From: Macrostomum lignano | Taxonomy: Eukaryota | Direction of reading: 5' to 3' | Length of the DNA: 64,000 bases | Assembly (NCBI GenBank): GCA_002269645.1 | Contig: NIVC01000359.1 | Location: forward strand, 372,001 to 436,000 | Shown: piece after piece, positions 11,551 through 58,600 of the stretch | How positions within the stretch are numbered: the first letter of the stretch is position 1 | Layout: every line of letters begins with the position of its first letter | Program-made: the position numbers and the translations under genes | Notes under the pieces: model-generated | The model's database searches: none | What the model saw: only the letters and a program-made list of their open reading frames with translations | Told to the model about the DNA's origin: nothing

Positions 11551-11558
11551 CAGAGAGA

Positions 11559-11620
<62 letters not shown>

Positions 11621-12611: not shown

Positions 12612-12856
<245 letters not shown>

Positions 12857-13507: not shown

Positions 13508-13783
<276 letters not shown>

Positions 13784-15443: not shown

Positions 15444-16428
<985 letters not shown>

Positions 16429-18849: not shown

Positions 18850-20550
18850 CAGTATGGTAACACTCTGTCCCACACTGCTACACCAGTATGGTAGCACTCT
18901 GTCCCACACTGCTACACCAGTATGATAACACTCTGTCCCACACTGCTACACCAGTATGGTAGCACTCTGTCCCACACTGCTACACCAGTATGATAACACT
19001 CTGTCCCACACTGCTACACCAGTATGATAACACTCTGTCCCACACTGCTACACCAGTATGGTAGCACTCTGTCCCACACTGCTACACCAGTATGATAACA
19101 CTCTGTCCCACACTGCTACACCAGTATGATAACACTCTGTCCCACACTGCTACACCAGTATGGTAGCACTCTGTCCCACACTGCTACACCAGTATGATAA
19201 CACTCTGTCCCACACTGCTACACCAGTATGATAACACTCTGTCCCACACTGCTACACCAGTATGATAACACTCTGTCCCACACTGCTACACCAGTATGAT
19301 AACACTCTGTCCCACACTGCTACACCAGTATGATAACACTCTGCCCCACACTGCTACACCAGTATGGTAGCACTCTGTCCCACACTGCTACACCAGTATG
19401 GTAGCACTCTGTCCCACACTGCTACACCAGTATGGTAGCACTCTGTCCCACACTGCTACACCAGTATGATAACACTCTGTCCCACACTGCTACACCAGTA
19501 TGGTAGCACTCTGTCCCACACTGCTACACCAGTATGGTAACACTCTGTCCCACACTGCTACACCAGTATGATAACACTCTGTCCCACACTGCTACACCAG
19601 TATGGTAGCACTCTGTCCCACACTGCTACACCAGTATGGTAACACTCTGTCCCACACTGCTACACCAGTATGATAACACTCTGTCCCACACTGCTACACC
19701 AGTATGATAACACTCTGTCCAACACTGCTACACCAGTATGATAACACTCTGTCCCACACTGCTACACCAGTATGGTAACACTCTGTCCCACACTGCTACA
19801 CCAGTATGGTAGCACTCTGTCCCACACTGCTACACCAGTATGGTAACACTCTGTCCCACACTGCTACACCAGTATGATAACACTCTGTCCCACACTGCTA
19901 CACCAGTATGATAACACTCTGTCCCACACTGCTACACCAGTATGATAACACTCTGTCCCACACTGCTACACCAGTATGATAACACTCTGTCCCACACTGC
20001 TACACCAGTATGGTAACACTCTGTCCCACACTGCTACACCAGTATGATAACACTCTGTCCCACACTGCTACACCAGTAGGGTAACACTCTGTCCCACACT
20101 GCTACACCAGTATGGTAACACTCTGTCCCACACTGCTACACCAGTATGATAACACTCTGTCTCACACTGCTACACCAGTATGATAACACTCTGTCCCACA
20201 CTGCTACACCAGTATGATAACACTCTGTCCCACACTGCTACACCAGTAGGGTAACACTCTGTCTCACACTGCTACACCAGTATGGTAGCACTCTGTCCCA
20301 CACTGCTACACCAGTATGATAACACTCTGTCCCACACTGCTACAACAGTATGGTAGCACTCTGTCCCACACTGCTACACCAGTATGGTAGCACTCTGTCC
20401 CACACTGCTACACCAGTATGATAACACTCTGTCCCACACTGCTACACCAGTATGATAACACTCTGTCCCACACTGCTACACCAGTATGGTAGCACTCTGT
20501 CCCACACTGCTACACCAGTATGGTAGCACTCTGTCCCACACTGCTACACC
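18850..20550. repeat. 34-bp minisatellite, ~50 copies
   Basis: Unit CCAGTATGATAACACTCTGTCCCACACTGCTACA. Confidence 0.97.
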
Positions 20551-21084
20551 ACTCATCAAACTGATAATTCAAAATTATCTCAGAAACCGGAATTGGATGC
20601 TGAAAATAAATTTAAAAAATGATGCAGATTTTTTGAAGAAAAAAAGCACTGATTTTATCATTCTGCGATTCACAGAGTTTGAGACTGACTGCTGGCACGC
20701 ATCATTAATTAAGACTGACTTGAATACAATAAATAAGATACAACAAACAATTCTCATTCAGTCTCATGGTCACTGCGAATGCATGCCGAGAATCTCTCCA
20801 GTCATCATTGTATTCTGAAAATTGTTTCGATACAATCTTTGTTCAGCTTCAATTGTTGGCTCACGCAAAACGTGCAGTCGGTTGGTTGTTTGGTTCATAA
20901 AAAGTTCTACTTTTAATACACGCAGCTTAATGGGTTTGCGTGCTAAGCACCTGATTCACATCCGAGTGGCCTGGCTGACTCAAATAGGTCTCAGACAAAC
21001 TCATTATAGAATCCACTGCTCAGGAGGGAGTCTGTCTGCTTAGCGTTTTGATAATTGATAGCGTTCTGGGAGGGGGAGGGGGAG

Positions 21085-26300: not shown

Positions 26301-29300
26301 TTCCAAGAAATAGAGAAATACACAATGCGTCAGTCCGTACCATAGACAGAAATCTCGGAGCCCGACAGCTCCTGCTGATTCATCATCCTGGACCGCATGG
26401 GAACCACGTAGTCAGTGTCCGTCAGGTACTGCCTGTCGCTGGCTCGGCTGCCCGCTGGCTCGGCTGCAACATTGGAACTCGCTGCTCAAGAGTCTGCTTG
26501 AACATGCTTTATTCAATGGAATCTTGCAAGCTTGCAACCTTCACACCCCTGCAACCTTCACATCCCTGCAACCTTCACACCCCTGCAACCTTCACACCCC
26601 TGCAACCTGCACACCCCTGCAACCTTCACACCCCTGCAACCTGCACACCCCTGCAACCTTCACACCCCTGCAACCTTCACACCCCTGCAACCTTCACATT
26701 ACTGTAAGCTTCACACCCCTGCAACCTTTACACCCCTGCAACCTTCACACCCCTGCAACCTTTACACCCCTGCAACCTTCACACCCCTGCAACCTTCACA
26801 CCCCTGCAACCTTCACACCCCTGCAACCTGCACACCCCTGCAACCTTCACACCCCTGCAACCTTCACACCCCTGCAACCTTCACATTACTGTAAGCTTCA
26901 CACCCCTGCAACCTTTACACCCCTGCAACCTTCACACCCCTGCAACCTTTACACCCCTGCAACCTTCACATTCTTGCAACCTTCACATTCCTGCAACCTT
27001 CACATCCCTGCAACCTTCACATTACTGTAAGATTCACACCCCTGCAACCTTCACACCCCTGCAACCTTCACACCCCTGCAACCTTCACATTCCTGCAACC
27101 TTCACATCCCTGCAACCTTCACATTCCTGCAACCTTCACACCCCTGCAACCTTTACACCCCTGCAACCTTCACATTCTTGCAACCTTCACATTCCTGCAA
27201 CCTTCACATCCCTGCAACCTTCACAACCCTGCAACCTTCACATCCCTGCAACCTTCACATTCCTGCAACCTTCACACCCCTGCAACCTTTACACCCCTGC
27301 AACCTTCACATTCTTGCAACCTTCACATTCCTGCAACCTTCACATCCCTGCAACCTTCACATTCCTGCAACCTTCACATCCCTGCAACCTTCACACCCCT
27401 GCAACCTTTACACCCCTGCAACCTTCACACCCCTGCAACCTTTACACCCCTGCAACCTTCACATCCCTGCAACCTTCACACCCCTGCAACCTTCACATCC
27501 CTGCAACCTTCACCCCCTGCAACCTTCACATTCTTGCAACCTTCACATTCCTGCAACCTTCACATCCCTGCAACCTTCACATTACTGTAAGATTCACACC
27601 CCTGCAACCTTCACACCCCTGCAACCTTCACATTCTTGCAACCTTCACATTCCTGCAACCTTCACATTCTTGCAACCTTCACATTCCTGCAACCTTCACA
27701 TCCCTGCAACCTTCACATTACTGTAAGATTCACACCCCTGCAACCATCACACCCCTGCAACCTTTACACCCCTGCAACCTTCACACCCCTGCAACCTTCA
27801 CACCCCTGCAACCTTCACATCCCTGCAACCTTCACAACCCTGCAACCTTCACATCCCTGCAACCTTCACACCCCTGCAACCTTCACATCCCTGCAACCTT
27901 CACATCCCTGCAACCTTCACATCCCTGCAAACTTTACACCCCTGCAACCTTCACATTCTTGCAACCTTCACATTCCTGCAACCTTCACATCCCTGCAACC
28001 TTCACATTCCTGCAACCTTCACATCCCTGCAACCTTCACACCCCTGCAACCTTTACACCCCTGCAACCTTCACACCCCTGCAACCTTCACACCCCTGCAA
28101 CCTTCACATCCCTGCAACCTTCACACCCCTGCAACCTTCACATCCCTGCAACCTTCACATTCCTGCAACCTTCACATCCCTGCAACCTTCACCCCCCTGC
28201 AACCTTCACATTCTTGCAACCTTCACATTCCTGCAACCTTCACATCCCTGCAACCTTCACATTACTGTAAGATTCACACCCCTGCAATCTTCACACCCCT
28301 GCAACCTTTACACCCCTGCAACCTTCACACCCCTGCAACCTTTACACCCCTGCAACCTTTACACCCCTGCAACCTTCACATTCCTGTAACCACATTCCTG
28401 AAACCTTCACATTCCTGCAACCTTCACACCCCTGCAACCTTCACACCCCTGCAACCTTCACATTCCTGTAACCACATTCCTGCAACCTTCACACCCCTGC
28501 AACCTTCACACCCCTGCAACCTTCACATTCCTGTAACCACATTCCTGAAACCTTCACATTCCTGCAACCTTCACACCCCTGCAACCTTCACACCCCTGCA
28601 ACCTTCACATTCCTGTAACCACATTCCTGCAACCTTCACACCCCTGCAACCTTCACACCCCTGCAACCTTCACATTCCTGTAACCACATTCCTGCAAACT
28701 TCACATTCCTGCAACCTTCACACCCCTGCAACCTTCACATCCCTGCAATCTTCACATTACTGTAAGCTTCACATCCCTGCAACCTTCACACCCCTGCAAC
28801 CTTCACACCCCTGCAACCTTCACACCCCTGCAACCTTCACATCCCTAAAATAAAATTCCTATCCCTACAAATAGATCCTGCAACTGATCCCCCTGAACCC
28901 CCCAGTCTCCCCTCCTCATCACCAGCCGGCTGTGGCGGGGGCGACAGAGGACCCTCCTTAACGCCGGTCATATTCCTGAACTCCGCGGCCGAGTTGGGTG
29001 CGCCAGAGGTGGCCAGCTGGTCAACGAGGCCGTCCTCAGCGGATGGCCCGGGGTCCACGGCTACCGCGGTTGCGACTGTAACGAAAGTTCACTGATCCAA
29101 TTCGCTTAAATTGTTTATGCTTTCCAAAATTACGCCTATCACTAATGCTCCCCACTGAGGCACCGAAACACTCCCCACACGGGCACTGAAACACCCCCAC
29201 AGACACTAAAACACCCCCAGACACTGAAACACTCCCCCCCAGACACTGAAACACCGTACAGACACTGAAACACCCCCACAGACACTGAAACACCGTACAG

Positions 29301-31977: not shown

Positions 31978-33130
31978 GTTGCACTCCTACCCCACCAGGA
32001 CAAACACTTCCCTATCCAATGTACACTCCTACCCCACCAGGACAAACACTTCCCTATCCAATGTACACTCCTACCTCAGCTGGACAAACACTTCCCTATC
32101 CAATGTACACTCCTACCCCACCAGGACAAACACTTCCCTATCCAATGTACACTCCTACCCCACCAGGACAAACACTTCCTTATCCAATGTACACTCCTAC
32201 CCCACCAGGACAAACACTTCCCTATCCAATGTACACTCCTACCCCACCAGGACAAACACTTCCCTATCCAATGTACACTCCTACCCCACCAGGACAAACC
32301 CCTCAATATTCCAATGTACACTCCTACCCCACCAGGACAAACCCCTCAATATTCCAATGTACACTCCTACCCCACCAGGACAAACCCCTCAATATTCCAA
32401 TGTACACTCCTACCCCACCAGGACAAACCCTCACTATTCCAATGTACACTCCTACCCCACCAGGACAAATCCCTCAATATTCCAATGTACACTCCTACCC
32501 CACCAGGACAAACCCCTCAATATTCCAATGTACACTCCTACCCCACCAGGACAAACCCCTCAATATTCCAATGTACACTCCTACCCCACCAGGACAAACC
32601 CCTCAATATTCCAATGTACACTCCTACCCCACCAGGACAAACCCTCAATATTCCAATCTACACTCCTACCCCACCAGGACAAACCCCTCAATATTCCAAT
32701 CTACACTCCTACCCCACCAGGACAAATCCCTCAATATTCCAATCTACACTCCTACCCCACCAGGACAAACCCCTCAATATTCCAATGTACACTCCTACCC
32801 CACCAGGACAAACCCTCACTATTCCAATGTACACTCCTACCCCACCAGGACAAACCCCTCAATATTCCAATGTACACTCCTACCCCACCAGGACAAACCC
32901 CTCAATATTCCAATGTACACTCCTACCCCACCAGGACAAACCCCTCAATATTCCAATGTACACTCCTACCCCACCAGGACAAACCCCTCAATATTCCAAT
33001 GTACACTCCTACCCCACCAGGACAAACCCCTCAATATTCCAATGTACACTCCTACCCCACCAGGACAAACCCCTCACTATTCCAATGTACACTCCTACCC
33101 CACCAGGACAAACACCTCACTATTCCAATG
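31978..33130. repeat. 42/43-bp minisatellite with two subarrays
   Basis: CCAATGTACACTCCTACCCCACCAGGACAAACACTTCCCTAT (42 bp), switching at ~32300 to ...ACAAACCCCTCAATATT (43 bp). Confidence 0.96.
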
Positions 33131-34310
33131 CACATTTGAAAGAAACTTATCTAATGTAGCATAACTTCCATGGTTTGGAAAAAGACATTTGCTTCCTAAA
33201 AAATGAAAATATAACCACACACAAAATACCACAATTGATAAAAATTAAATCCCCCCCATCAATTCCATATGGTATGGTTTACTTGATTTTAACTAAATCA
33301 AAGGAAACGATAAACAATACAAAAAGACGTCGTACGCTTCTAGCAGCTACACGCTACACACACATGTAAGACTCGGAATGCAAGCGCAAACTACTCGAGC
33401 TAAGAAGCAAATGATAAAAATAGCTGGCATTAACGGGGTAAAGAAACGTAACAGCAAACTGCAATCAGCTAGTGGATCAGTTTAGATCGCAAAGCCAGAA
33501 ACGAATCGAGCTGATTTGGTCACAAAATACAAATATACGAAAAGCCAAAAGATAAAGCCCGTGTTACGAGTGTATCTGCTCTACCGTATATACATCTCAG
33601 GAGATTCTGTAGTTCATTAGCAAATTGATAAATACAACAGAGCTTTTAAAAACTGATTAAGATAAAAGTTGCCCAGACTGGCTTCTGCGCTATTAGCCTA
33701 GCCTAGATTTGATGCAAGTGACAGCCAATTATTGATTGAACGCAACAACTGTTCTTCAGAGTTTCAATATACCAATTAACTTCTGGAACGAGATAGAAAA
33801 AAATATATTTTGCTTAATTCAGTGCTTAAATTTCAGCTTCATCAGGTTGACAGAACAAAAGCAATCGAGAATTTACTGGCGAGCCTACCGTCAGAGGTTG
33901 GTTCTGCGCACTCTGTTTATTGCTGCTTGGTGAAATCTGCGTTTAATTTGGTGCGTATTCGCCAGTAGGCCGACTTCTCAGCCACTTAGGGTTTGGCCAT
34001 AAACTTAGCAGAAAGCAATTTAGAAGTGCACTTATTCCCGGCACTTTCCCGATGTCATTATTCCACACTTTTTTATCATGTTTCAATTGGCGGTTTTGAG
34101 AGTTAGGTTTGGTTACTCTGCGATGAATGTGTTTGAATCTAAATGTCGGTGTAATATTTGAAGTGTAATAATGATCACAACTTGTTTCAATTGTGTGCAG
34201 GTGTAAGTATATGTACAATGATTAATCAATACCCAGCGAAAGCTTTAGACACAGAATATACACAGAATGTCAAATCGAGCGATTTTCATGAAGCCGAATT
34301 AAAATTGCAG

Positions 34311-35098
34311 GTGCATGTTGGCAGACTGTACCGAACCATCTTGGACGGACGCGGAGGCGACTTGGATCTCGTCATCGATGATGAGTCGTACTTCCACATG
34401 TCCAGCCAAACGATTCCTGGCAACAGCTTCTACTATGCCACTGCGCACGCGGCGACGCTCCTGTTGAGAAGCGCGTTTCACCTCAAAAGAAGTTCGGCGA
34501 CAAGATCCTGGTGTGGCTGGCCATCAGCAGGCATGGGGCTTCGCGAGTGTACATGTGTCACTCCAAGACGATGAACAAGGAGCTGTACGCAAACGAGTGC
34601 ATTCGCAAGCGGCTGGTGCCATTTCTCAATGAGCAGCACAGCGATGGCAATTACCTGTTCTGGCCAGATCTGGCCTCCTGCCATTACGCCAAGGACGTGA
34701 TCGAGGTGTTCCAGCAGCTGGACATCAACTTTGTCTCGAAGGAGCAGAATCCTCCCTGCGTGCCTCACCTTCGTCCAATCGAGCACTTTTGGGGCATTTT
34801 GAAGCAGCAGGTGTACCATCATAGTTGGCAGGCTCAGACACTTCAGCAGCTGGAGAACAGAATCAAGAAATGCCTGAGGGAGATGGACTGGTCCGTTGTA
34901 CATCACATGATGGGACAGGTCAAGTCGCAGATTCGCAGGGCGCGCGCTGATGGCTTTTAATCGGCTTATTGTTAACTCTATGATGATTCCTGTTTCTTGT
35001 TGAATACTTTCCCTGTTAAAAAGTTTGGTTATCCTGTTTATAACGCCACGAAATATAAACATTTAGAGACGTCCAGATTTTAAGTGTTCACCCACGTA
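34311..35098 (+). mobile_element. 5'-truncated Tc1/mariner DNA transposon, DD37E (ITmD37E-like) transposase pseudogene
   Basis: Catalytic motifs VIDDESYF (34377), LFWPDLASCHYA (D at 34667) and NPPCVPHLRPIEHFW (E at 34781) give D-37-E spacing. Frameshift near 34445; stop at 34960. Candidate 3' TIR ends ...AGTGTTCACCCACG+TA at 35098. No N-terminal HTH or 5' TIR seen. Confidence 0.9.
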
Positions 35099-35620: not shown

Positions 35621-38600
35621 CTATGTAGGCTTAGTTTTCTTCACCAGCGTGGAATTGCCGTACAGTACGTAGCGGAACATATCGCCAAGAGTGGAATCTA
35701 CATACTTAATAGTCTCCATATTGTACTGTTTGCCGTGAAATCTGTACCAGAGATGCATAACGTAGTTCTTCTTACGCCAGTCCCATTTCCGCACGGGGCC
35801 ATAGATCAAAGGCAGCTCGCCGCCAGTCCAATTGGGTCGGTCCATGCTCTCCTGCTCGATGTGGCAGTGCTCGGAGTACATGGGGCACAGGGTGTTGGGA
35901 TAGGTGACGGAGTGGGCAGCCCATATGCCATCGTCGAGAACCTGGTAGGTGACGTACCACATGCACATGAAGGTGGAGTTGGCCGCGGCCAGAAAGACGC
36001 CGTTGCAGAGTCCGCCGCCCGTCTCCCTGCCGATGGTGAACGGGTAGCGGCGCAGCGGCTCCAGCGGCTTCAATGTGATCACGTCGATGTCGAAATAGGC
36101 GCCGCCAAGTACCAGCACGGCTTCCATGCGGATCACATCGGCCTGGTGCTCCTTCACGCGCATCGGCACCGAATAGGACTGCGGTTGGGGAGACGCGGGA
36201 GCACTCGGTGTTGGGGTGACCTGCCATTAGCCCTACTCACTCAATAGCTTGCCCATTAGCCCCATTCACTCAATAGCTTGCCCATTAGCCCTACTCACTC
36301 AATAGCTTACCCATTAGCCCCATTCACTCAATAGCTTGCCCATTAGCCCTACTCACTCAATAGCTTACCCATTAGCCCCATTCACTCAATAGCTTGCCAA
36401 TTAGCCCCATTCACTCAATAGCTTGCCCATTAGCCCCATTCACTCAATAGCTTGCCCATTAGCCCCATTCACTCAATAGCTTGCCCATTAGCCCCATTCA
36501 CTCAATAGCTTGCCCATTAGCCCCATTCACTCAATAGCTTGCCCATTAGCCCCATTCACTCAATAGCTTGCCCATTAGCCCCATTCACTCAATAGCTTGC
36601 CAATTAGCCCCATTCACTCAATAGCTTGCCCATTAGCCCTACTCACTCAATAGCTTACCCATTAGCCCCATTTACTCAATAGCTTGCCAATTAGCCCTAC
36701 CCACTCAATAGCTTACCCATTAGCCCCATTCACTCAATAGCTTGCCCATTAGCCCTACTCACTCAATAGCTTACCCATTAGCCCCATTCACTCAATAGCT
36801 TGCCCATTAGCCCTACTCACTCAATAGCTTGCCCATTAGCCCCATTCACTCAATAGCTTGCCCATTAGCCCCATTCACTCAATAGCTTGCCCATTAGCCC
36901 CATTCACTCAATAGCTTGCCCATTAGCCCCATTCACTCAATAGCTTGCCCATTAGCCCCATTCACTCAATAGCTTGCCAATTAGCCCCACTCACTCAATA
37001 GCTTGCCCATTAGCCCCATTCACTCAATAGCTTGCCCATTAGCCCCATTCACTCAATAGCTTGCCAATTAGCCCCACTCACTCAATAGCTTGCCCATTAG
37101 CCCCATTCACTCAATAGCTTGCCAATTAGCCCCACTCACTCAATAGCTTGCCCATTAGCCCCATTCACTCAATAGCTTGCCAATTAGCCCCACTCACTCA
37201 GTTACCCTTTCCATTGGCTCCACTCACTCAATAGCTTGCCAATTAGCCCCACTCACTCAGTTACCCTTTTCATTGGCTCCACTCACTCAGTAGCCTTTCC
37301 ATTAGCCCCACTCCCTAGCTTCCCTAAATCAACTCCATCCACTCAGCAGCTTTCCGTATTAGTGGAATCAGTGAATTTAGGTACGAGTATTCAGCAAATT
37401 ATATCAATACCTTTGTGGGCACGGGCCGATTAATCATGATAACGTTGCTCTCCCAGATGCCAGAGTCGGTGAGATTCTTCTTAAACGCTTCCCAATGCTC
37501 GCCATAAGGCTGCTTAGCGTACCAGATAACAGTAAATTTGGGCCGCATCACCCAGACTCCGCTGAGCATACAGACTAGATGATGAAATTGCAGTTGAGGA
37601 TTCACAAACGGCAGTACATAGTGAGCAACATTGGGCACAAGATACGGAGCGGTAGGCTTAGTCATAGCCTGCACTTCGGCAACAGTGTACTGCTTGCCGC
37701 TAGGAGAGTGCAGGCGCCATCCGCTCGTGTCAACAATTGGCAGTTTGTGCACCATCAGCTCGTTGATTCGAGACGCGTATTTGCCGGAGAATGGACGCAC
37801 TGAGCTCTTCAGCTTGTCGAATTGGCTAATAATGTAGCTCTTATTCATGGGGGCGTACACGTAGTCTCGGCCGGCCACCTGGTCGGCGACCTTCACCGGC
37901 GTTGGCTTGACAGCAGCAGACGTGGACGAGACGGCAGTTCCTGCCAGAGGTCGGGAAGAGATGAGGGTGATGGTACAGGGTAGCGGGGAATCAAATCTTA
38001 GCGAGTCAAATCTCACTGAGAGGGAGTTGAATTTTCACTGAGAAGGAGTCAAATCTCACTGAGAGGGATTTAAATCTTTACTGAGAGGAAATCAAATCTC
38101 ATTGGGAGGGAGTCAAATCTCACTGAAAGTGAGTCAAATCTCACTGAAAGTGAGTCAAATCTCACTGAGAGGAAATCAAATCTCATTGGGAGGGAGTCAA
38201 ATCTCACTGAGAGGGAGTCAAATCTCACTGAGAGGGAGTTGAATTTTCACTGAGAAGGAGTCAAATCTCACTGAGAGGGATTTAAATCTTTACTGAGAGG
38301 AAATCAAATCTCATTGGGAGGGAGTCAAATCTCACTGAAAGTGAGTCAAATCTCACTGAGAGGAAATCAAATCTCATTGGGAGGGAGTCAAATCTCACTG
38401 AGAGGGATTTAAATCTTTACTGAGAGGAAATCAAATCTCATTGGGAGGGAGTCAAATCTCACTGAAAGTGAGTCAAATCTCACTGAGAGGAAATCAAATC
38501 TCATTGGGAGGGAGTCAAATCTCACTGAGAGGGAGTCAAATCTCACTGAGAGGGATTTAAATCTTTACTGAGAGGGACTCATATCTCACTGAGAGGGATT

Positions 38601-40050
38601 TAAATCTTTACTGAGAGGGAGTCAAATCTCACTGAGAGGGAGTCAAATCTCACTGAGAGGGAGTCAAATCTCACTGAGAGGGAGTCAAATCTCACTGAGA
38701 GGGAGTCAAATCTCACTGAGAGGAAATCAAATCTCATTGGGAGGGAGTCAAATCTCACTGAGAGGGAGTCAAATCTCACTGAGAGGAAATCAAAGCTCAC
38801 GAATAGGTAATGAAATCTCACAGAAGTGAATCAATTAGAAGGAATAAAATCCACTCACGCGCAGCAGCAATGGGCTGTATGCTAGAATTGCCAAACAGTA
38901 TATGCCTAGCGATTTGGCCAAAAGCAGAGTTCAACTGTTTAACCGAATTGAAATCAACTGTCAAAGTCGCGCCCGGAGATTGCAGCTCCCGCTGCCTGCG
39001 CCACAGGTTAATAAGCCAGTTATCTCGCCAGTTCCAAGCGGGCGGAGAGCCCGGCGGCCCGTAGATCAGCCGCAAGCCGGCCGCCTGCCAGCCGGGCTTG
39101 TGCATGCCGCCAATCTCAATTTTGGCCAAGTGCGGGAAAGCCGATTGCAATGCGAACGGCAGCAGAGTGGAATGCTGATCAGGCAGAGAATCGTCAAGCA
39201 GCTGGTAGCACAGGTGCCAGGCTAGCAGGAATCGAGAGTTTCGCTTAGCCAAGTAAGCGGAGCTGCCAATGCCGCGGTCGTGCTGCAGGCCCAGCACGGT
39301 CTCGGCTGAACGAAGCGCCTGGCTAGCCGGCCGCATGGGCAGCACGTCAGTGTCCAGCCTGAGGCCGCCGAACAGTAGCACAGCCTCCAGGCCGATCAGA
39401 TCCGATCGATGACGCCAAGAGTTGATTGGCATATTGTACACAGATGCTGGAGGCTGGCGACGAGCCAGTACAACTGTGCGCTCCCAGACCGGCTCGGTGA
39501 CATTGGCAATGAGATGAGACCAGTAGCCGCCACTCACAGGCTGCTGATGCCATAGAAACACGCGCACCGGCTTAGCCAGGTGAAATGCGGCCAATAAGCT
39601 GAGCAGCTCGTGAAATTGCAGCTCAGCCCGACGGAATGGCAGCACATAGTGGATAATGTTGGGGGCCAGGCCCGGCTCCGTAGCGTTGGCTATGCTAGTC
39701 CGCAGCTGCTCATAGTACAACTGATGGCCTCCGGGTGTCTGCAGTTCGAGTTGACTCAACGTGAGCACGGGCTCCTTGGCGGTGAACAGCTGATGGGCTA
39801 GGCGAGTATTAGCTCCGGCAAACTGTACAGCCACAGATCGAATAGTTTCCCAATTAGTCAGCGTGAAATTTCGCGCCTCGGACAGTTCAGACGGGCTAGT
39901 CCGGCCACCGTAATCGTACTCGTACGAGTAGGACAGATTCAAGAATTTGCCAATGTTGCCGCTCCGGCTGGCGTATGCGAGCACCAGAGCGATGGTGACC
40001 AAGCATAGGATTGCCACTGCCCGGCGATAGAGCAGAGCTCGCTGCGTCAT
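35621..40050 (-). CDS. Type II membrane glycosyltransferase with two tandem GT32-like (alpha-1,4-GlcNAc/Gal transferase-type, DxD) domains, ~759 aa
   Basis: complement(join(35621..36178,37411..37940,38859..40050)); GT-AG introns, phases 1 and 0 compatible. N-terminal TM AVAILCLVTIALVLAYA. Domain 1: PNIIHYV...HRSDLIGLEAVLLFGGLRLDTDV. Domain 2: PNVAHYV...HQADVIRMEAVLVLGGAYFDIDV. A 50-bp 5'UTR intron is predicted at 40062-40111. Confidence 0.85.
36225..37300. repeat. 29-bp intronic minisatellite
   Basis: Unit GCCCATTAGCCCCATTCACTCAATAGCTT. Confidence 0.97.
38000..38800. repeat. 21-bp intronic minisatellite
   Basis: Unit GAGTCAAATCTCACTGAGAGG. Confidence 0.96.
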
Positions 40051-40654
40051 TGGCCCCCAGGCTGCGGATGGTCAAGTGCGCGGGCTAATTTGAATGGTTA
40101 TTAATACTCACCTCTTAGAAGACACTAAACTGGCTCTCTTGAGTAAGAGTCGTGTGAAACAAGAGCAGAAAGATGAAGTCGTGAATGATAAAATTCCGGA
40201 TTTTGTACAGCCTGCAAGAGAGTCAACAGACCTCCTACCCTCCCTACCTACCTACCCAATGGCAGTCTCTACCAAGGAGGCCCATTGTCTGGGCTAACAC
40301 CGACCCTCAAACTATTGGCGCGTGCACACCCATACACGCACAGCATAGCTACTTGAGAACCCAACCCTATTGGCTGTCGAGCTTGGCCCTAATTGAAGCT
40401 AGCTAAGCATAAAGTACAGCAGCGCGCAGCAATTCTGCCCCTCTTCCCGTTGTGACTATCATCACCAAAAAGGTAATGGAATTGAATTCTAGCAGCTAGC
40501 TTTGACTGAGCCACTTACCAGACGGGAAAATTCCTATTCAAACACATTAGTATTTGCTTTAATGACGAGGTGCTGGGAGGTTTATTACTAATAATCAAAA
40601 GTACTTTTAAAATTGTTACTTAGAAACTGCCTCAGTTTAATCACTTCAGTAGCT

Positions 40655-44263: not shown

Positions 44264-47136
44264 TCAATGCTCGAACAGGCTGACCAAGGTGCAACCGTTG
44301 GCGGTGACAAAGAACTGCACAGCCGGCAGCAGACAGTTGGCAATAGAGGCCAACTCGGCTGAGGCGTCAAAATTGTCCGGCCCGGCTTTGTTAAACAGCG
44401 GCGCGCAGGCGACGGACAGAACCGGCGCCGCTCTGGCCGCGTCGGGGATCAGGGCGAACAGGCGTCGGTCCTGGCACGGCGCCGGCACGCGCACCATGGC
44501 GCCGAGATCAACCAGGCGAACGATGACGCCAGCGGCTGCACCGCTGCTGTCGTTATCAACGGCGAGAATTCGAGCCCGATAGCACTGGCCGTCGTCTAGT
44601 TTAGCTACGCAGTTGGCGCCAATTCGAATGTCGCCGGCGCGAAGCGGCAGCGCCATCTGGCTAAGCTCGCTATACAGGTACTGCAGCCGCGAGTGCAGCG
44701 CCTCGAACTGGCCGGCAAATTCGGCCAGCGGCAGAACTCGAACTCGATCGGCCGTGCCGCCGGGTAGCAACACGGCTGCGCGCCGTTTATTGTCAGTCAG
44801 GCGCAGGCTGGCCGGCGCTTCGCTGACATTACAGTCGGCGCCAATTTGAAGCAACTTCTTGACGGTGTAGCGCAGCCGGCGCGGGCTGGCAGAGTGGGGG
44901 AGGCGCTCGCCGCTGCCGCCGCCATTGGAAGCAGCCTGCAGTACGCCGCTGCGCACCCGCTGCCGGTGCTGCTCGCTGAAAAACTCGGCCAACTCCGGCC
45001 GGTCCAGCGGCAGGCCGTCTAGCAGGCCGGCCGGGGAGATGAGCTGCACAGGCCAGGCTGAATCGTCTGCGGACATGCAGCCGAATTCCACCAGCACCTG
45101 CGGGCGGACAGGGTGTGGGCAAGGGTTTATTATTATTAGCCTCAGGTAGTTAACTATTAGCCTTACAGGTAGCTAATTATTAGCCTCACAGGTAGTTAAC
45201 TATTAGCTTCACAGGTTGTTAACTATTAGCTTCACAAGTTGTTAACTATTAGCCTCACAGGTAGCTAATTATTAGCCTCACAGGTAGTTAACTATTAAAA
45301 TCACAGGTAGTTAACTATTAGCTTCACAGGTTGTTAACTATTAGCCTCACAGGTAGCTAATTATTAGCCTCACAGGTAGTTAACTATTAAAATCACAGGT
45401 AGTTAACTATTAGCTTCACAGGTTGTTAACTATTAGCCTCACAGGTAGCTAATTATTAGCCTCACAGGTAGTTAACTATTAAAATCACAGGTAGTTAACT
45501 ATTAGCTTCACAGGTTGTTAACTATTAGCCTCACAGGTAGTTAGCTATTAGCCTCACAGGTAACTATTAGCATCACAGGTAACTATTAGCCTCACAGGTA
45601 ACTATTAGTCTCACAGGTAGGTAGCTATTAGCCTCACAGGTAGTTAGCTATTAGCCTCACAGGTAGTTAGCTATTAGCCTCACAGGTAACTATTAGCCGC
45701 ACAGGTAGTTAGCTATTAGCTTCACAGGTTGTTAACTATTAGCCTCACAGGTAGATAGCTATTAGCCTCACAGGTAACTATTAGCCTCACAGGTAACTAT
45801 TAGCCTCACAGGTAACTATTAGCCTCACAGGTAGTTAGCTATTAGCCTCACAGGTAACTATTAGCCGCACAGGTAGTTAGCTATTAGCTTCACAGGTTGT
45901 TAACTATTAGCCTCACAGGTAGATAGCTATTAGCCTCACAGGTAACTATTAGCCTCACAGGTAGTTAGCTATTAGCCTCACAGGTAACTATTAGCCGCAC
46001 AGGTAGTTAGCTATTAGCTTCACAGGTTGTTAACTATTAGCCTCACAGGTAGATAGCTATTAGCCTCACAGGTAACTATTAGCCTCACAGGTAGTTAGCT
46101 ATTAGCCTCACAGGTAACTATTAGCCTCACAGGTAGTTACCTATTAGCTTCACAGGTAGTTAGCTATCAGCCTCACAGGTAGCTAATTATTATCCTCACA
46201 TGTAGTTAACTATCAGCCTCACATGTAGCTAATTAGTCCTACAAATGGCCACTTATTTTATTAGCCCCACTAAATGGCCACTTTTTAGCCGCAAAAAGGT
46301 CCTTCATTAGCCATATATACAGTTGCAAGGCAAGAACTAACCTCGCGTTCCATAAGCCGTTTGGCCAACCAAGCGGCGGCCACCTCGCCGTACTGTCTAT
46401 GGCACAAACCGGCCAGCTGACAACGATAGGAACGCGGCGGCGGGCCGTCATCTTCGGCCAAGTCTAGCGGACAACAGCGCAACAGGCAGGCGGGCAGACA
46501 GCACCTATTGCCAAAGTCCACAAATTCAACTAAGCCAAATCCGCCAGCCAGTACGCGCAATAACTTAGCCCGAAAATAACCGGCTTCAGGCGGGAAGTAA
46601 GCTACGCAAGCGACGTCGCTGCCAACGTTGTCAATAGGCAGATGAGGCAGAGAGTCTGCAATCCGACGCAGATAGCTGTGCATGCTGGCTAGCTCAGCGC
46701 GACATTCAATCGGTACTAAGCAGATCTGTTTAGTGCCCTGGGTGTGCAGCACAACGCACCGAGTCGGCTCGCTTGGTGGAGGCGGCTGACGACAGTAAGC
46801 TGTGGCGTAGCCCTGCTGGTTGTCAGGCTTTGAAACGCTATTGTTGTTGTTGCTTAAACTGCTAATGTTGTTGTTATCGCGATTGCGCGTATCATCTTTG
46901 TGACTAGCAAGATCGGCGGAAAGTCCGTTATGGACATTGTTAACATTGTCAACTATTCCACTGTCAAAATGTATTGGCGTTGTATTTCTTGGCGTTTCCG
47001 ATTGCTGCTGCTGCTCAGCTGCTTCCTGCTCCAATTGTTGGCACGATAAACGACGACGTTCGAGAAAGTCGCGCCTAACCCGGTAGTATAATCCTCTGCT
47101 ACTAGTGGAAGACCTTTCGATGATGTTCATGGTCAT
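44264..47136 (-). CDS. Tudor-domain protein (TDRD-like) with two extended Tudor domains, ~542 aa
   Basis: complement(join(44264..45097,46342..47136)); donor GAG|gttagt, acceptor ccgcag|GTG, phase 0. Tudor 1: CVAYFPPEAGYFRAKLLRV...VEFVDFGN. Tudor 2: GANCVAKLDDGQCYRARILAV...VRLVDLGA. Confidence 0.85.
45130..46240. repeat. ~19-23-bp intronic minisatellite (Tudor gene)
   Basis: Unit CTATTAGCCTCACAGGTAGTTAA and variants. Confidence 0.96.
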
Positions 47137-48157: not shown

Positions 48158-51100
48158 TCAGGGCATCTCGGGCAGCAGCAGGGCACTCTGAGAGCCGCAG
48201 GCGCCGGCCTCCAAATGCTCAGCCATATTGTCGCCAGAGTCGGTTGCAAATCCGCAAGTCGGGCAATAGAAATCGCCCAAGCCGTCTTCATTCTTGTCGG
48301 CGCTGTCGTCAGTTTCCATGGCAACCGGCGGTGTAGCGGCGGCGGAAGCGTGGCTAGCAACGTGCCGCTGGTAGGCGGGCCCGCAGCAGGTGGCGTAGCG
48401 GCACTGACCAGCAGTGCAGGGCACATAGTGCCGATGGTCGGGGCCGTTCAGAGGCCGGCGACACTCCAGACAGAGCATGGCGCTGTCCAGGTGAGGCGGC
48501 AAAGCGACGCCGCTGAGATCGCGGGCCGTTTCAGCTGGGGCGGCGTTCAGCGACTTCAGCTGCTGCGACGAGCCGGGGCCTTTCTGCAGAGCGAGTAGAA
48601 TGTCAAGAAAGAGACCTTCTTTGACACTCACCAAGATTCTAACTAATTATCTCAGTATTATAACTAACAACCTCAGTATTGTAATCGATAATCTTAGTAT
48701 TCTACTAATCGATAATCTCAATATCCTAATCGATAATCTCAGTATACTAATCGATAATCTTATTATCCTAATCGATAATCTCAATATCCGAATCGATAAT
48801 CTCAGTATCCCAATCGATAATCCCAGTATTCTAATGGATAATCTCAGTATCCCATTCGATTATCTCAGTATCACAATTGATAATCTCAGTATCCCATTCG
48901 ATTATCTCAGTATCACAACTGATAATCTCAGTATCCTAATCGATAATCTCAGTATCACAATCGATAATCTCAGTATCCTAATCGATAATCTCAGTATCCT
49001 AATTAAATCTTAGTGTCCTAATCGATCATCTCAGTATCCTAATCGACAATCCAAGGATTTAATCTACTATACTCAATTATGGAGAATCCGATGATCCTGA
49101 TTAATAATTCAATATACAAATCTAAGAGTCTAATTTGTCAGTTCATCGCAGGGGCACTAATACTCTTACTTGGCTGGCCATACGTGAAAAGCTAAAGTTA
49201 GAGCTCTCAAAGAACAGCCTTAGATCATTTAACAGAGGAAGTGAACTGCTGCAAGTGAAAATGCGCACAACATGCATAAGAATTCTATTTGGACAGCTGA
49301 TTTGGCACTTAAATCTGACGTTAAATCCAGCTAACTCGACAGAGTTGAGGTGGGGGGGGGAGAAAGTTAGGAATAAATTGAGAAATTTTTTGAAATGCAA
49401 TATAGAGTAAACTAACTCTAAAAACTGTAGGAGAAAATTAATTACGTTTTTTTACGTTAAGAGAATTAATTACGTTAAGAGAATTTCTAATTCTCTTTAT
49501 TGAAAGCCTAGTGGTTTAATAAGCTGATAAAGTGCAGTGCTTTTCATGTCAAAGACAAAGGCAAGAGTGAGGCAGAACGGAACTGTAACACCCAAGGAGG
49601 ACCAGTAACACCCAGGGAGGAACTGGAACACCCAATATGGAACTGTAACACCCACCAAGGACCTGTAACACCCACCAAGGACTTGTAACACCCACCAAAG
49701 ACCTGTAACACCCACCAAGAACCTGTAACACCTACTAAGGACCTAGCGCAGAAGCAAGCAACCAACCTGAGGCGAGGCAGACTGCTGGTGCTGTTCCAAG
49801 TCCTCGAGCTGCTGCAGATCGCCAGGCCGATGGTCCAGCTGCTGGTGCATGTTCAAATCTGATTTAGTAACAAAGCTCAACTGGCACTGGTTGCACCGTT
49901 TGCCGCTACTAGAAGCAGCAGCAGCAGAAGAAGAATTATCGTCGTCAAAGTGGCGCTGCAGATGCTGGGTGAACACGCCGGTGAGGCCGCTAGAATCGCC
50001 GCCGATCGCCCCAGGTGCGTAGGCCGCGCCAGACGAGCTGGGGAAAGTGATTCGGATAGCTTTGAGACAGAGCGGGCACAGCAGGTGTGGCGAGGCGGCG
50101 TGCATCCGGCAGAAGTGAGTCAGGATGTCGCGCAGTACGCTAGTCCGGAAGCTGCACAGCTGGCAGGCGTAAGGCATCTGCCTGCGCAGGTGGCGAGTCC
50201 GCATGTGCCTGGCGAACTGCTCCGTATTGGCGAACTCTCTGTCGCATACGCGGCACAGTTTTCGGCCAGCCGGAGTCAGGTGCGAATCCGCTCGATGCTC
50301 GGCCAGCTGGTAGTGTCCGGCAAAGGTGGCCGGACAGGCCGGACAGCGGACAATCTCGGTCGAGCAGTCTTGCAGCAGAGCCGAAACCGACTGCGAAGCC
50401 GGCTCAAAATGGCCGAGAATGTGCCGAACTGTGCTCAAATTCGAATATAGAATCTTTGAGCACAGGTGGCAACGGAAGCGAAGGTCCTGACGTGGCTCCG
50501 GCTGGGAGGCCTGCTGGCACTCCTGTCTGGCGAAGTAGTACACGTCTAGGGCCACCAGCACCTGCGAGAGGTTGGAGAATATCATTTCGAATCGATAGGC
50601 CTAAAATTACTGCCAGAATCCTTCCTACCCATGATTGTACATGACATTTACGTCGTATTCCATATTTGTATATGGCTTTCACATTATATCTCAGATCTGT
50701 ACATGACTTTCACATTATATCCCATAATTTTACATGGCTTTTACATTACATCCCATAATTTTACATTTTTTATATTATATCCCATATCTGTACATGACTT
50801 TCACATTATATCCCATATCTGTACATGACTTTCACATTATATCCCATATTTGTACATGGCTTTTACATTATATCCCATATTTGTACATGGCTTTTACATT
50901 ATATCCCATATTTGTACATGACTTTCACATTATATCCCATATCTGTACATGACTTTCACATTATATCCCACATTTGTACATGAATTTCACATTATATCCC
51001 ATATTTGTACATGACTTTCACATTATATCCCATATCTGTACATGAATTTCACATTATATCCCATACTCGTATTTGTACATTACTTTTACATTATATCCCT

Positions 51101-55634: not shown

Positions 55635-58600
55635 TTACTTCGCCCCTTTCTTGTTGCCAGCGGCGGCAACAGCGGCTGCGGCAGCTTCGTCGCTAAGCGG
55701 CTTCTCGTGCGGGGCCGGCAGCTTAATGCCGTGCGGATCAACGCCCCAGATGTCCTTGGCGTACTCCATGATGGTGCGATCAGACGAGAACTTGCCAGAC
55801 GCGGCAATATTGAGCAGGCTCATTTTCGCCCACTTGTTCGTGTCCTGTCGGTGATTGGTGTTTTTGGTTGGGAACTAAATCGTGTATGATTTACAGTACA
55901 TACTACTTCTCTTGTAAACAAGAAGTAATGTATAGCGAAAGTGGAATTTGCACAATTGATGCAACATAGACGTTAAAAGATATCAAAAACAGCCCATTTA
56001 ATTTCTATTTACTGGCACTGGAATCTGGTTCCGTTGTGCCTGTCCATATGCTAGATAAACAAGATCACAACTGTATCAAGACACAAAAATACAAACACAC
56101 ATAAACAGTATTATCACTATATCAGCAGTAGAAAAGACAATTGTGTACTTTAAAAAGTAGCGTGGAGCCATGCAAACGTTAAATGTCGTGAAAGGCTGTT
56201 CGTTGGCTTGCAGGTACAGATAGAGAGAGAGAGGAGAGAGATAGAGGGGAGGAGGAGCGAGAAAATAGAGCGCTGGCTGTATGTACTGTTTAAGCTACAG
56301 TCGAGGTAAACTGCATTAGCCTAGACAAGCAATGAATTCAGTCTGCGATGCCACCCGTAGGCTTGGCAGAATAGAATAAGAAGAATATAAGAGAGAGAAT
56401 TTGCAATGTTTTGGAATTATGAGAGCAAAAAATAAGCATTGCATACAGCACTATAAACTGCTGATGGCTGACATGTTAGGGTACCTGGCTGGATAAGATG
56501 AGACTAAAACACATGCGTCGTACAGTGCGCACTAGTAATGAATGAACCGCAACTTGTGTGAATTTGTCATTTGTAGGCTTTTTATTAGCAACATTAACCA
56601 ACTCTAGCCATAACTATTTACTCTCTCCTCGCCGGTCTAAGCTGGGGCATTGCCGACCCCCAGTTGAGACGAGAAGAACCACTGGCTTAGTGTGAATTGC
56701 GTCACTTGGGGCTGAGATCTGAGCAAATTTGACCACTGGTTTCGAGGTGGAAACTTTAACAGGTTGCCGAGTGTACACAGTAACTATCTGTGTTTAAAAG
56801 CATAACAGGGTCTCCAGTTAGCCAATATATGGTTTTGGCAGTCAAACAGTTCAATAATCATGAAGGGATGTACTTAATGACCTTGAAGGGGTACTCAGCT
56901 ACTATGAAGGTGTACTCAATCATCATGAAGATGTACTTGTTTATCATGAAGGGTACTCAATGATCATGAAGAGGGAGTCAATGATCATGAAGGGTACTCA
57001 ATGATCATGAAGGGGCACTCAATGATCATGAAGGGACGAAACAGGATGCGTTAGAACTCACCATGTAGGCGGCGGACACCTCTTCCTGAGCCCGCATATA
57101 GTCCTCATAGTCGGCCAGGAGCATGAAGCGATCGTGGTTCACCAAATTGTTGTAAATTTCTTGAAACAAAGCAGGATTCTCCGGCGAGAAAGCGCCATCC
57201 CGGATCATGTCCAGGCAGCGGCGCAGCTCGCCATTCTTCTCGTAGTACTCACGCGGTTTATAGCCGCGCTGGCCTAGCTCCTTGACTTGATCAACTGACA
57301 TGCCGAATACGAACATATTCTCGCGGCCCATCTCTTCGCACATTTCAACATTGGCGCCGTCCATTGTGCCAATAGTCAGGGCTCCGTTTAGCATGAATTT
57401 CATGTTGCCGGTGCCAGAAGCCTCGGTGCCGGCCGTGCTAATCTGCTGGGACAGATCGGCTGCCGGGAAGATCTTCTCGGCCAGACTGACTCGATAGTTT
57501 TCTAGGTATACAACCCGAAGTCGCTTGCCAACAATGGGATCGTTGTTGACGACCCGGCCGACCGAATTGATGAGCTTGATGATCAGCTTGGCCATGTGGT
57601 AGCCTGGAGCGGCCTTGCCGCCGATCATGACAGTCCTGGGCGCGTGCTTGCCCTGCGGATTGTCTCTGATGCGATTGTACTGCGTGATCACGTACAGGCA
57701 GTTGAGCAGCTGGCGCTTGTACTCGTGAATGCGCTTCACCTGCGAATTAAGGGCGGCGGATGAGGCATCAAATGCTGCTGAGATTCTCAAGGGTTTCAAG
57801 GGAATTTCCAGGATCAACTATGGCTTCTACGGGAATTTCTATGATTGATTATGGCTTCATGGATATTTCTATGATCGATTATGGGGTTATGGCTTCATGG
57901 ATATTTCTATGATTGATTATGGCTTCTACGGGAATTTCTATGATTGATTATGGCTTCTATGGGAATTTCTATGATTGATTATGGCTTCTACGGGAATTTC
58001 TATGATTGATTATGGCTTCTACGGGAATTTCTATGATTGATTATGGCTTCTACGGGAATTTCTATGATTGATTATGGCTTCTATGGGAATTTCTATGATT
58101 GATTATGGCTTCATGGATATTTCTGGGATCGACTAGGGCTTTAGTGGAATTTCTGGGATCCACTAGGGCTTCAGGGAAATTGGTGAGATAAGCTAAAACT
58201 TCAGCGTTCTCAGGAGATTGGTTTCCAAGTTTCCAATTGTTTTGTCTATAAATAACAAGATTTATAGAACAGGGAACTTGAGCACATTGAGAACAAATGG
58301 CGGCTATAAGATTATAAGTAAAACAAACCTGTATGTCAAACATGCTCGAAGGGTCGACCTTGATCTTGAACTCGCGGTCAATATATTCGGCAAACTTGCG
58401 CTTATTCTGATCCTTAACCTTCATTAGTTCGCGCAAGAAATTCTGATCATTTTGCAGCGACTCCAGGCCGCGCAGTTTGAACAGATCGGTGACCCAGTCG
58501 AATCCAATCTTCTCAGTGATAAGCTCAGATAGGTTGGGGTTGCACAGCAGTAGCCAACGCCTAGGCGTGATTCCGTTAGTCTTGTTCTGAAACTTCTCTG

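What the first reader, a model, noticed from the sequence alone, without database searches (positions are those of the whole stretch)
35621..40050. Two GT32-type glycosyltransferase domains spliced into one Golgi-type protein
The ORF track shows three separate ORFs. A GTGAGT donor just after ...IQPIAAA (38858) and a CTCTGGCAG acceptor (37941) are phase-compatible. A second phase-0 intron (37410-36179) gives an ungapped alignment of the two domains (RQPPASVYNMPINSWRHRSD vs RPVPTKSYSVPMRVKEHQAD). The product is TM-[GT32 domain 1]-S/T/A/P linker-[GT32 domain 2]. Animal GT32 enzymes I know (A4GNT, A4GALT) are single-domain. A tandem enzyme could build a two-sugar unit processively, as EXT/LARGE-type bifunctional enzymes do, possibly for a lineage-specific mucus or adhesive glycan. 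The functional idea is inference.
Basis: partly seen in the sequence, partly recalled or inferred. Interest (0 to 1): 0.72.

Follow-up and report, generated by a model that had tools for sequence, protein, structure and literature searches.

The report
Flatworm glycosyltransferase gene with two domains
This is a real, already annotated but unstudied three-exon gene of the flatworm Macrostomum lignano. It encodes a membrane-anchored sugar-transferring enzyme with two related catalytic-type domains in one chain: one textbook, one clearly degenerate.

Summary
Three minus-strand ORFs join through a phase-1 intron (38858-37941) and a phase-0 intron (37410-36179) into a 759-aa protein. That protein is an exact substring of GenBank PAA84848.1 (Macrostomum lignano, BOX15_Mlig026117g1), an RNA-seq-derived gene model.

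Two homeologous loci keep identical splice sites, although their intron lengths differ.

The protein has one N-terminal signal anchor, then two paralogous GT-A domains (30% identity, E 2e-61).
- Domain 2 is canonical. It passes Pfam PF04488 and keeps 35 of 35 family-conserved positions.
- Domain 1 keeps the DXD motif and a confidently predicted GT-A fold. It gets no Pfam hit and keeps only 25 of 35 positions, fewer than any of 127 single-domain relatives.

Both domains fall inside a Macrostomum-type paralog clade. Intron 1's acceptor matches the stem intron of a single-domain paralog. This points to a fusion of tandem duplicates.

Tandem or triple-domain relatives also exist in amphioxus, hemichordates and abalone, usually with the same canonical/degenerate asymmetry. 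So the architecture is not unique.

This is a new variant of a known kind, of moderate interest.

The parts
38859..40050 (-). Exon 1. It runs from the ATG at 40050 and encodes a short Arg-rich cytoplasmic tail, the signal anchor, the stem and the whole of domain 1 (residues 1-397 plus the first base of codon 398).
   Evidence: 100% identical to L002
39970..40020 (-). The only hydrophobic segment (AVAILCLVTIALVLAYA, residues 11-27), a type II signal anchor.
   Evidence: Kyte-Doolittle scan: the only 19-residue windows scoring above 1.6 start at residues 4-13
39343..39414 (-). Domain 1 nucleotide-sugar and metal motif, RHRSDLIGLEAVLLFGGLRLDTDV. The DXD (DTD) lies at 39346-39354. The family-conserved Arg is replaced by Gly and the Tyr by Arg.
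37941..38858 (-). Intron 1: phase 1, GTGAGT...CTCTGGCAG. About 89% of it is a 21-bp minisatellite (38003-38821). It contains no AATAAA or ATTAAA. If it is left unspliced, the frame ends 13 codons later, at the stop codon 38818-38820.
37411..37940 (-). Exon 2: the S/T/A/P-rich linker/stem and the N-terminal half of domain 2 (residues 398-574). It includes PNVAHYVLPF at 37606-37635.
36179..37410 (-). Intron 2: phase 0, GTATTG...CCGCAG. About 88% of it is a 29-bp minisatellite (36224-37310). It is absent from paralogs P0173 and P0009.
35621..36178 (-). Exon 3: the C-terminal half of domain 2, including EHQADVIRMEAVLVLGGAYFDIDV (36080-36151, DXD at 36083-36091) and the HLW motif (within MHLWYR, 35741-35758). 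The stop codon TAG is at 35621-35623.

Best explanation
The region is one three-exon gene of Macrostomum lignano, GenBank BOX15_Mlig026117g1 (protein PAA84848.1). It encodes a 759-aa type II membrane protein, presumably of the Golgi.

Layout: a short cytoplasmic tail, one signal anchor, a stem, a divergent GT-A domain (d1), a Ser/Thr/Ala/Pro linker, and a canonical GT32-type (PF04488) GT-A domain (d2).

Proposed origin (inferred): two tandemly duplicated single-domain paralogs fused within the macrostomid lineage. The upstream copy uses a GTGAGT donor 13 codons before its own stop. It splices into what looks like the pre-existing phase-1 stem-intron acceptor of the downstream copy, so the whole upstream protein replaces the downstream copy's TM exon.

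Proposed function (inferred): d2 is the working enzyme, a Mn2+/DXD-dependent retaining glycosyltransferase that uses a nucleotide sugar in the secretory lumen. d1 keeps the fold and the DXD but has lost many family-invariant residues. It most likely has an altered or auxiliary role, such as acceptor binding, spacing or scaffolding, rather than the ancestral activity.

Shown: gene structure, homology, topology signals and the asymmetry of conservation. Inferred: donor sugar, acceptor, localisation, whether d1 is active, and the fusion route.
For: Gene model:
- The junctions are phase-compatible.
- The product is identical to PAA84848.1.
- The same model is annotated at two further homeologous loci. 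Splice sites are identical, exons are 99-100% identical, and intron lengths vary (734/918/811 and 395/1232/1219 bp).
- The GenBank annotation was built from RNA-seq with StringTie/TACO. It was cut at experimentally mapped trans-splice and poly(A) sites (PMC5730564).

Topology:
- There is one hydrophobic segment, at residues 11-27.
- Ten N-X-S/T sequons are spread over both halves.

Family:
- d2 scores 29.3 bits against PF04488 (cut-off 23).
- 54 of the 55 sequences in alignment A1 hit PF04488. The exception is d1.
- 1822 relatives have E<=1e-3, most of them 330-420 aa with a single domain.

Asymmetry between the domains:
- d2 keeps 35 of 35 conserved columns and d1 keeps 25 of 35. The 127 single-domain members have a median of 32 and a minimum of 26.
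- d1 shows R->G, Y->R, H->K and H->N at signature positions.
- pN/pS between homeologs is 0.5-0.7 for d1 and 0.15-0.3 for d2 (counts are small).

d1 fold:
- The AlphaFold2 model has pLDDT 82.4 and pTM 0.84.
- Its best PDB matches are retaining GT-A transferases.

Origin:
- Both domains sit in an 18-member Macrostomum-type clade.
- Paralog P0173 has a TM exon followed by a phase-1 stem intron. Its position and phase are the same as those of intron 1's acceptor here.
- P0173-type genes lie in tandem genomic arrays.
Against: - I did not see junction-spanning reads directly. The transcript support is second-hand, through the published annotation pipeline.
- d1 retains DXD, GG, the N-terminal His and the H..SD motif. 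It stays open in all three homeologs with pN/pS below 1. It could therefore be an active enzyme with a new specificity.
- The conserved-column test uses relatives retrieved mainly by similarity to d2. This biases the single-domain set toward canonical sequences.
- The pN/pS values rest on 1-10 substitutions.
- The NJ tree has no support values, and d1 sits on a long branch.
- No member of this invertebrate subfamily has been characterised, so donor, acceptor and Golgi localisation are extrapolated from GT32 enzymes.
Confidence: 0.7

Rival explanations
1. True bifunctional enzyme. Both domains are catalytically active retaining transferases with different donor or acceptor specificity, and they build a two-sugar unit or repeating glycan on one chain.
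For: - Both domains keep the DXD in the GGx(Y/R)xDxD context, the N-terminal PN(I/V)xH motif and H..(S/A)D.
- d1 folds confidently as GT-A.
- d1 is kept open in three homeologs with pN/pS below 1.
- Tandem architectures recur and are conserved across amphioxus and hemichordates, which suggests selected function.
Against: - d1 lost 10 of 35 family-conserved positions, fewer retained than in any of 127 single-domain members. The losses include two conserved His and the Arg and Tyr adjacent to the DXD.
- d1 has no Pfam hit.
- d1 has a higher pN/pS than d2.
- Known bifunctional polymerising enzymes, such as LARGE and EXT, combine different GT families (own knowledge). Here the two domains are paralogs.
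Confidence: 0.25
2. Two separate genes. One version is an operon in which the d1 gene ends at the 38818 stop and d2 is SL trans-spliced at 37941. The other is that the fused mRNA is only a minor read-through chimera of tandem duplicates.
For: - About 15% of M. lignano genes are estimated to lie in operons. Repeat-adjusted intergenic distances peak near 100 bp (PMC8629364).
- The gap from the 38818 stop to 37941, minus the 819-bp minisatellite, is about that size.
- The unspliced exon-1 frame closes after only 13 more codons.
- Annotated models in this family can splice across tandem copies (P0173).
Against: - The annotation pipeline cuts transcriptional units at mapped SL and poly(A) sites. 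It left all three homeologous models fused.
- Exon 2 has no in-frame ATG before d2 residue 31 and no hydrophobic anchor.
- The AUG at the 3' end of the published SL is out of frame with exon 2 and meets a stop after 16 codons.
- Intron 1 has no AATAAA or ATTAAA.
- The consensus GTGAGT donor is conserved in all copies.
Confidence: 0.05

Closest known systems
Vertebrate GT32 enzymes A4GALT (Gb3/CD77 synthase) and A4GNT
   Same: - Type II membrane topology, GT-A superfamily, and an essential DxD (DTD in human A4GALT, as in domain 1 here) (PMC11546571).
- Both match PF04488.
- UniRef auto-names the single-domain Macrostomum paralogs 'alpha-1,4-N-acetylglucosaminyltransferase'.
   Different: - The vertebrate enzymes have a single domain of about 340-353 aa. 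This protein has two domains and 759 aa.
- The C-terminal region here matches no other Pfam family. In particular it does not match the Gb3_synth region that I recall as typical of A4GALT and A4GNT.
- The similarity to PF04488 covers only about 39 residues around the DXD.
- This is a separate invertebrate subfamily, not an orthologue.
Multi-domain members of the same subfamily: Branchiostoma XP_066281009.1 and relatives (3 domains), Saccoglossus XP_006824871.1 and XP_077863513.1 and Ptychodera XP_070554338.1 (2 domains), Haliotis asinina XP_067649921.1 (3 PF04488 stretches)
   Same: - Two or three tandem copies of the same GT32-like domain in one predicted chain.
- In most of them one domain, usually the C-terminal one, is canonical and the others lack the same signature residues.
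   Different: - They have an independent origin. The deuterostome C-terminal domains cluster together, and so do the N-terminal ones. Both Macrostomum domains cluster with Macrostomum-type single-domain paralogs.
- All are uncharacterised predictions.
Two-domain animal glycosyltransferases LARGE1/2 and EXT1/EXT2
   Same: They are type II Golgi proteins with two GT domains in one chain. LARGE is bifunctional (PMC5137251, listed). From my own recollection of the cryo-EM work on the EXT1-EXT2 complex, one domain of each subunit is catalytically inactive. That would be a precedent for a canonical-plus-degenerate design.
   Different: Those enzymes combine domains of different CAZy families and mechanisms. 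Here the two domains are paralogs of one family, and no polymer product is known.
Fungal Och1 (GT32 alpha-1,6-mannosyltransferase; PDB 9n3s)
   Same: It matches the PF04488/DXD region in the profile search and shares the GT-A fold.
   Different: The match is weak (E 0.057 by sequence; TM about 0.25). Och1 has a single domain and is fungal.

Membership tests
Pfam PF04488 Gly_transf_sug (the GT32-type DXD region) | Score above the Pfam gathering threshold (23 bits): domain 2 | tested here: met
   29.3 bits, E 1.4e-6, residues 182-220 of d2; 37.6 bits for the full-length protein
Pfam PF04488 Gly_transf_sug (the GT32-type DXD region) | Score above the Pfam gathering threshold: domain 1 | tested here: not met
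   No Pfam family is reported for d1 even at E<=10. d1 is the only one of the 55 sequences in alignment A1 without a hit. Its homology to d2 is nevertheless certain (E 2e-61).
GT32-type retaining GT-A transferases | DXD motif in the conserved (S/A)D...GGxYxDxD context | tested here: met
   d2 has EHQADVIRMEAVLVLGGAYFDIDV and d1 has RHRSDLIGLEAVLLFGGLRLDTDV. Both Asp align to columns that are invariant in the 16-sequence alignment A2 and about 97% conserved across the wider domain set. d1 has Y->R and R->G.
GT32-type retaining GT-A transferases | GT-A fold | tested here: met
   The d1 model has pLDDT 82.4 and pTM 0.84. The best Foldseek PDB hits are retaining GT-A enzymes (GT8 LgtC and glycogenin, UGGT catalytic domain, Och1, bacterial glucosyltransferases), at TM of only 0.3-0.4. 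The d2 fold is inferred from homology; its single-sequence model failed.
GT32-type retaining GT-A transferases | Type II membrane topology with a lumenal catalytic domain | tested here: met
   A single N-terminal hydrophobic segment at residues 11-27 follows an Arg-rich tail, and there are 10 sequons. Localisation itself was not tested.
GT32-type retaining GT-A transferases | Transfer of a sugar from a nucleotide sugar with retention of configuration | not testable with these tools
   Needs enzyme assays.
A4GALT/A4GNT subfamily | C-terminal Gb3_synth-type conserved region in addition to PF04488 (feature recalled from my own knowledge of Pfam) | tested here: not met
   Only PF04488 (plus a sub-threshold TcdA_TcdB hit) is reported at E<=1-10.
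Bifunctional two-family glycosyltransferases (LARGE/EXT type) | Two domains from different GT families with distinct mechanisms | tested here: not met
   The two domains are paralogs at 30% identity, E 2e-61, and both lie in one Macrostomum-type clade.

The most novel reading that the evidence does not exclude
The pairing of one canonical GT32-like catalytic domain with one or two degenerate paralogous domains has arisen at least twice: in macrostomid flatworms and in the deuterostome lineage, and possibly again in molluscs. In this reading the degenerate domains have become non-catalytic, glycan- or acceptor-binding modules, analogous to the lectin domain of GalNAc-transferases. That would define a new class of pseudo-glycosyltransferase-assisted enzymes that build lineage-specific alpha-linked glycans in marine invertebrates.
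Probability: 0.3. Interest if true: 0.55.

Novelty: new variant of a known kind. Interest (0 to 1): 0.35.

Why it matters
Animal GT32 enzymes are known as single-domain Golgi transferases (A4GALT, A4GNT). This gene and its amphioxus, hemichordate and abalone counterparts show something different: an uncharacterised invertebrate GT32-like subfamily repeatedly builds multi-domain chains in which only one domain stays canonical.

That gives a natural system for asking how a duplicated catalytic domain is re-used, whether for a second activity, for acceptor recognition or as a scaffold.

It also gives a clean example of gene fusion by splicing an upstream paralog into a downstream paralog's stem-intron acceptor.

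M. lignano supports RNAi and transgenesis, so the question can be tested. The practical impact is modest. The gene model is already public, and no link to adhesion or mucus glycans is shown.

Tried and rejected
- Word-indexed protein searches were nearly uninformative. The full-length query returned only its own cluster. The domain 1 query returned nothing, not even itself, so that negative says nothing about d1 orthologues in other species.
- Single-sequence AlphaFold2 of d2 failed (pLDDT 31.5) and was not used.
- The PDB sequence search with d2 gave only chance hits to fructose-1,6-bisphosphatase. The family profile matched only about 25-60 residues around the DXD of bacterial glucosyltransferase domains, SetA and Och1. 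There is therefore no close solved structure.
- A literature search for the locus names found nothing. Searches for tandem GT32 enzymes and for GT32 evolution in invertebrates found nothing relevant.
- No further copy of the domain lies elsewhere in the window.
- I considered a separate first exon for domain 2 hidden in intron 1 and rejected it. That interval is almost entirely a 21-bp minisatellite, and its only ORFs are repeat-encoded.
- I considered the SL-supplied AUG as a start for a stand-alone domain 2 and rejected it, because it is out of frame.
- M. lignano P0007 (918 aa, named 'reverse transcriptase domain-containing') looked like a second tandem gene. Its first domain is a fragment separated from the second by about 340 residues. 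I treat it as a probable merged gene model.
Full report
**Observation**

The three minus-strand ORFs are present at 38818..40050, 37399..38016 and 35621..36169.

Reading the minus strand gives two introns:
- Intron 1 runs from ...GCT GCT GCG C|GTGAGTGG (donor G at 38858) to ...CCTCTGGCAG|GA ACT GCC (acceptor G at 37941). It is phase 1, and the split codon c|ga encodes Arg.
- Intron 2 runs from ...CCC ACA AAG|GTATTG (donor at 37410) to ...CCAACCGCAG|TCC TAT TCG (acceptor G at 36179). It is phase 0.

Joining 40050-38859, 37940-37411 and 36178-35621 gives an uninterrupted 759-codon frame.

**Identity of the locus**

- The spliced product retrieves a Macrostomum lignano cluster at 99% identity and 100% coverage. 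The members are UniRef A0A1I8JBU2 and GenBank PAA59563.1, PAA84848.1 and PAA57727.1.
- The 759-aa product is an exact substring of PAA84848.1.
- The exons are 100% identical to contig NIVC01000359.1 of assembly GCA_002269645.1.
- The window is therefore the BOX15_Mlig026117g1 locus, annotated as a 'hypothetical protein'.
- Two homeologous loci, L001 and L003, carry the same gene. Splice-site sequences are identical and exons are 99-100% identical. Intron lengths differ (734/918/811 bp and 395/1232/1219 bp) because both introns are mostly minisatellite.

**Transcript support**

I could not see reads. The GenBank annotation of this assembly, however, was generated from RNA-seq. It used StringTie/TACO plus a de novo transcriptome. 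Transcriptional units were then cut into genes at experimentally mapped spliced-leader and poly(A) sites (PMC5730564). All three homeologous models remained fused. This argues against a trans-splice or poly(A) site between the two domains.

Independent sequence arguments point the same way:
- Exon 2 has no in-frame ATG before residue 31 of domain 2 and no hydrophobic segment.
- The AUG at the end of the published 35-nt SL (PMC8629364) would be out of frame with exon 2, with a stop after 16 codons.
- Intron 1 has no AATAAA or ATTAAA.
- Across junction 2 the product aligns without a gap to single-exon paralogs: RPVPTK|SYSVPMRVKEHQAD against RPIPTSVYSVPVHGKEHQSD.

The operon rival deserves mention. 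M. lignano operons often have repeat-filled spacers whose repeat-adjusted length is about 100 bp, which is similar to this gap. The points above make it unlikely.

**The protein**

- There is one hydrophobic segment, at residues 11-27, after an Arg-rich tail.
- Ten N-X-S/T sequons are spread over both halves.
- The two halves are paralogs: 30% identity over 334 residues, E 2e-61.
- Domain 2 passes Pfam PF04488 Gly_transf_sug (29.3 bits, cut-off 23). Domain 1 has no Pfam hit even at E<=10.

**The family**

An exhaustive HMMER search of 1.84 billion representatives found 1822 relatives at E<=1e-3. Most are 330-420 aa with a single domain. Named members come from nemerteans, annelids, bivalves, abalone, hemichordates and amphioxus, and there are several Macrostomum paralogs.

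In a 55-sequence alignment, 54 sequences hit PF04488. The exception is domain 1.

No solved structure is close. The family profile matches only the DXD region of bacterial glucosyltransferase domains, SetA and fungal Och1.

A model of domain 1 built with a 16-sequence alignment is confident (pLDDT 82.4, pTM 0.84). It resembles retaining GT-A transferases, at TM of only 0.3-0.4.

**Asymmetry of the two domains**

I defined 35 columns that are at least 80% conserved among 134 single-domain representatives:
- The 127 single-domain members with few gaps keep a median of 32, with a minimum of 26.
- Domain 2 keeps 35 of 35.
- Domain 1 keeps 25 of 35.

Domain 1 retains the DXD (DTD), the GG, the N-terminal His and H..SD. 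It has R->G and Y->R next to the DXD, H->K, and H->N in the HLW motif.

Between homeologs, pN/pS is 0.5-0.7 for domain 1 and 0.15-0.3 for domain 2. This rests on only 1-10 substitutions per class.

**The architecture is not unique**

Scanning the retrieved proteins with the family HMM shows other multi-domain members:
- two near-full-length domains in Saccoglossus (two genes), Ptychodera and several unnamed assemblies;
- three domains in Branchiostoma (an 838-840 aa protein conserved in several species, plus a 1388-aa protein);
- three PF04488 stretches in a Haliotis asinina protein.

In most of these, one domain is canonical, usually the last, and the others lack the same signature residues.

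In a distance tree of 258 core columns, the deuterostome C-terminal domains group together, and so do their N-terminal domains. Both Macrostomum domains fall in an 18-member clade of Macrostomum-type single-domain proteins. Domain 2 sits next to P0173, and domain 1 sits on a long branch. The flatworm fusion is therefore an independent event. The tree is NJ without support values.

**Origin**

- Paralog P0009 is a single exon.
- Paralog P0173 consists of a TM exon (residues 1-60), a phase-1 intron in the stem, and a body exon.
- In the alignment, that intron falls at the same residue and phase as the acceptor of intron 1 here: K61|SNSLLMAVQAAK against R|TAVSSTSAAVK.
- P0173-type genes lie in a tandem genomic array.

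The simplest history is tandem duplication, followed by use of a donor near the end of the upstream ORF. That donor joins the downstream copy's existing stem acceptor and replaces its TM exon. This is inference.

**Mechanism**

I commit to the following.
- Domain 2 is the active enzyme: DXD/Mn2+-dependent and retaining. This follows from membership of the GT32-type family, whose DxD is essential in A4GALT (PMC11546571).
- Domain 1 is a fold-preserving but functionally shifted module.

Whether domain 1 is inactive or has a new specificity cannot be decided here. Nothing here links the gene to adhesive or mucus glycans.

**Comparison and novelty**

- It is not an A4GALT/A4GNT orthologue. It has no further Pfam region, and the match to PF04488 covers only about 39 residues.
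- It is not a LARGE/EXT-type enzyme, which combines two different families.
- It is a two-paralog-domain variant within an uncharacterised invertebrate GT32-like subfamily.
- The gene model is already public, and I found no paper discussing it.
- Interest is moderate to low. The notable point is the recurrent canonical-plus-degenerate design.

Noticed in passing
window 36179-37410: Intron 2 (phase 0) is absent from the paralogs P0173 and P0009, which are contiguous across this point. About 88% of it is one 29-bp minisatellite (36224-37310). Its length is 395, 1232 and 1219 bp in the three homeologs. It is a candidate recently gained and expanding intron.
   Followed up: partly
window 36179-36222: An upstream AG at 36222-36221 (GGCTAATGGCAG|GTC) would be an in-frame alternative acceptor. 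It would add 14 residues (VTPTPSAPASPQPQ) inside domain 2. Homology and the annotation favour the downstream site.
   Followed up: partly
L004 (NIVC01000572.1) 6001-16535: There are three tandem genomic copies of a single-domain paralog: 6001-6684 (partial), 10365-11675 and 15474-16535. The annotated P0173 model splices the TM exon of copy 1 to the body of copy 2, skipping the rest of copy 1.
   Followed up: partly
P0018 (Branchiostoma lanceolatum XP_066267614.1, 1388 aa): The predicted protein has an N-terminal nucleotide-sugar transporter domain (PF04142, residues 66-327) followed by three GT32-like domains. It is either a transporter-transferase fusion or a merged gene model.
   Followed up: no
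window, whole length (e.g. 18850-20551, 26533-28846, 31982-33134, 59448-60713): More than 30 high-scoring mini- and microsatellite arrays fill introns and intergenic DNA. They explain most long 'ORFs' and the strong GC-skew blocks at 26-30 kb.
   Followed up: partly
window 34158-34960 (+): A Tc1/mariner-type DDE_3 transposase remnant lies about 660 bp beyond the 3' end of the gene's coding sequence. It is split over two frames, and a straight translation has 5 stops.
   Followed up: partly
window 40051-40112: A CCGCAG acceptor-like site (AG at 40063-40062) lies 11 nt upstream of the ATG. A GGTGAGT donor-like site lies about 45 nt further upstream. The G-run between the acceptor and the ATG is 5 G here and 6 G in the two homeologs. 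This may be a small 5'UTR intron or an SL acceptor.
   Followed up: no
window 44264-47136 (-), 49743-50585 (-), 57026-59351 (-): The neighbouring genes on the same strand are a Tudor-domain protein, a C2H2 zinc-finger protein and glycogen phosphorylase exons. The order is syntenic with L001. None has an obvious functional link to the transferase.
   Followed up: partly
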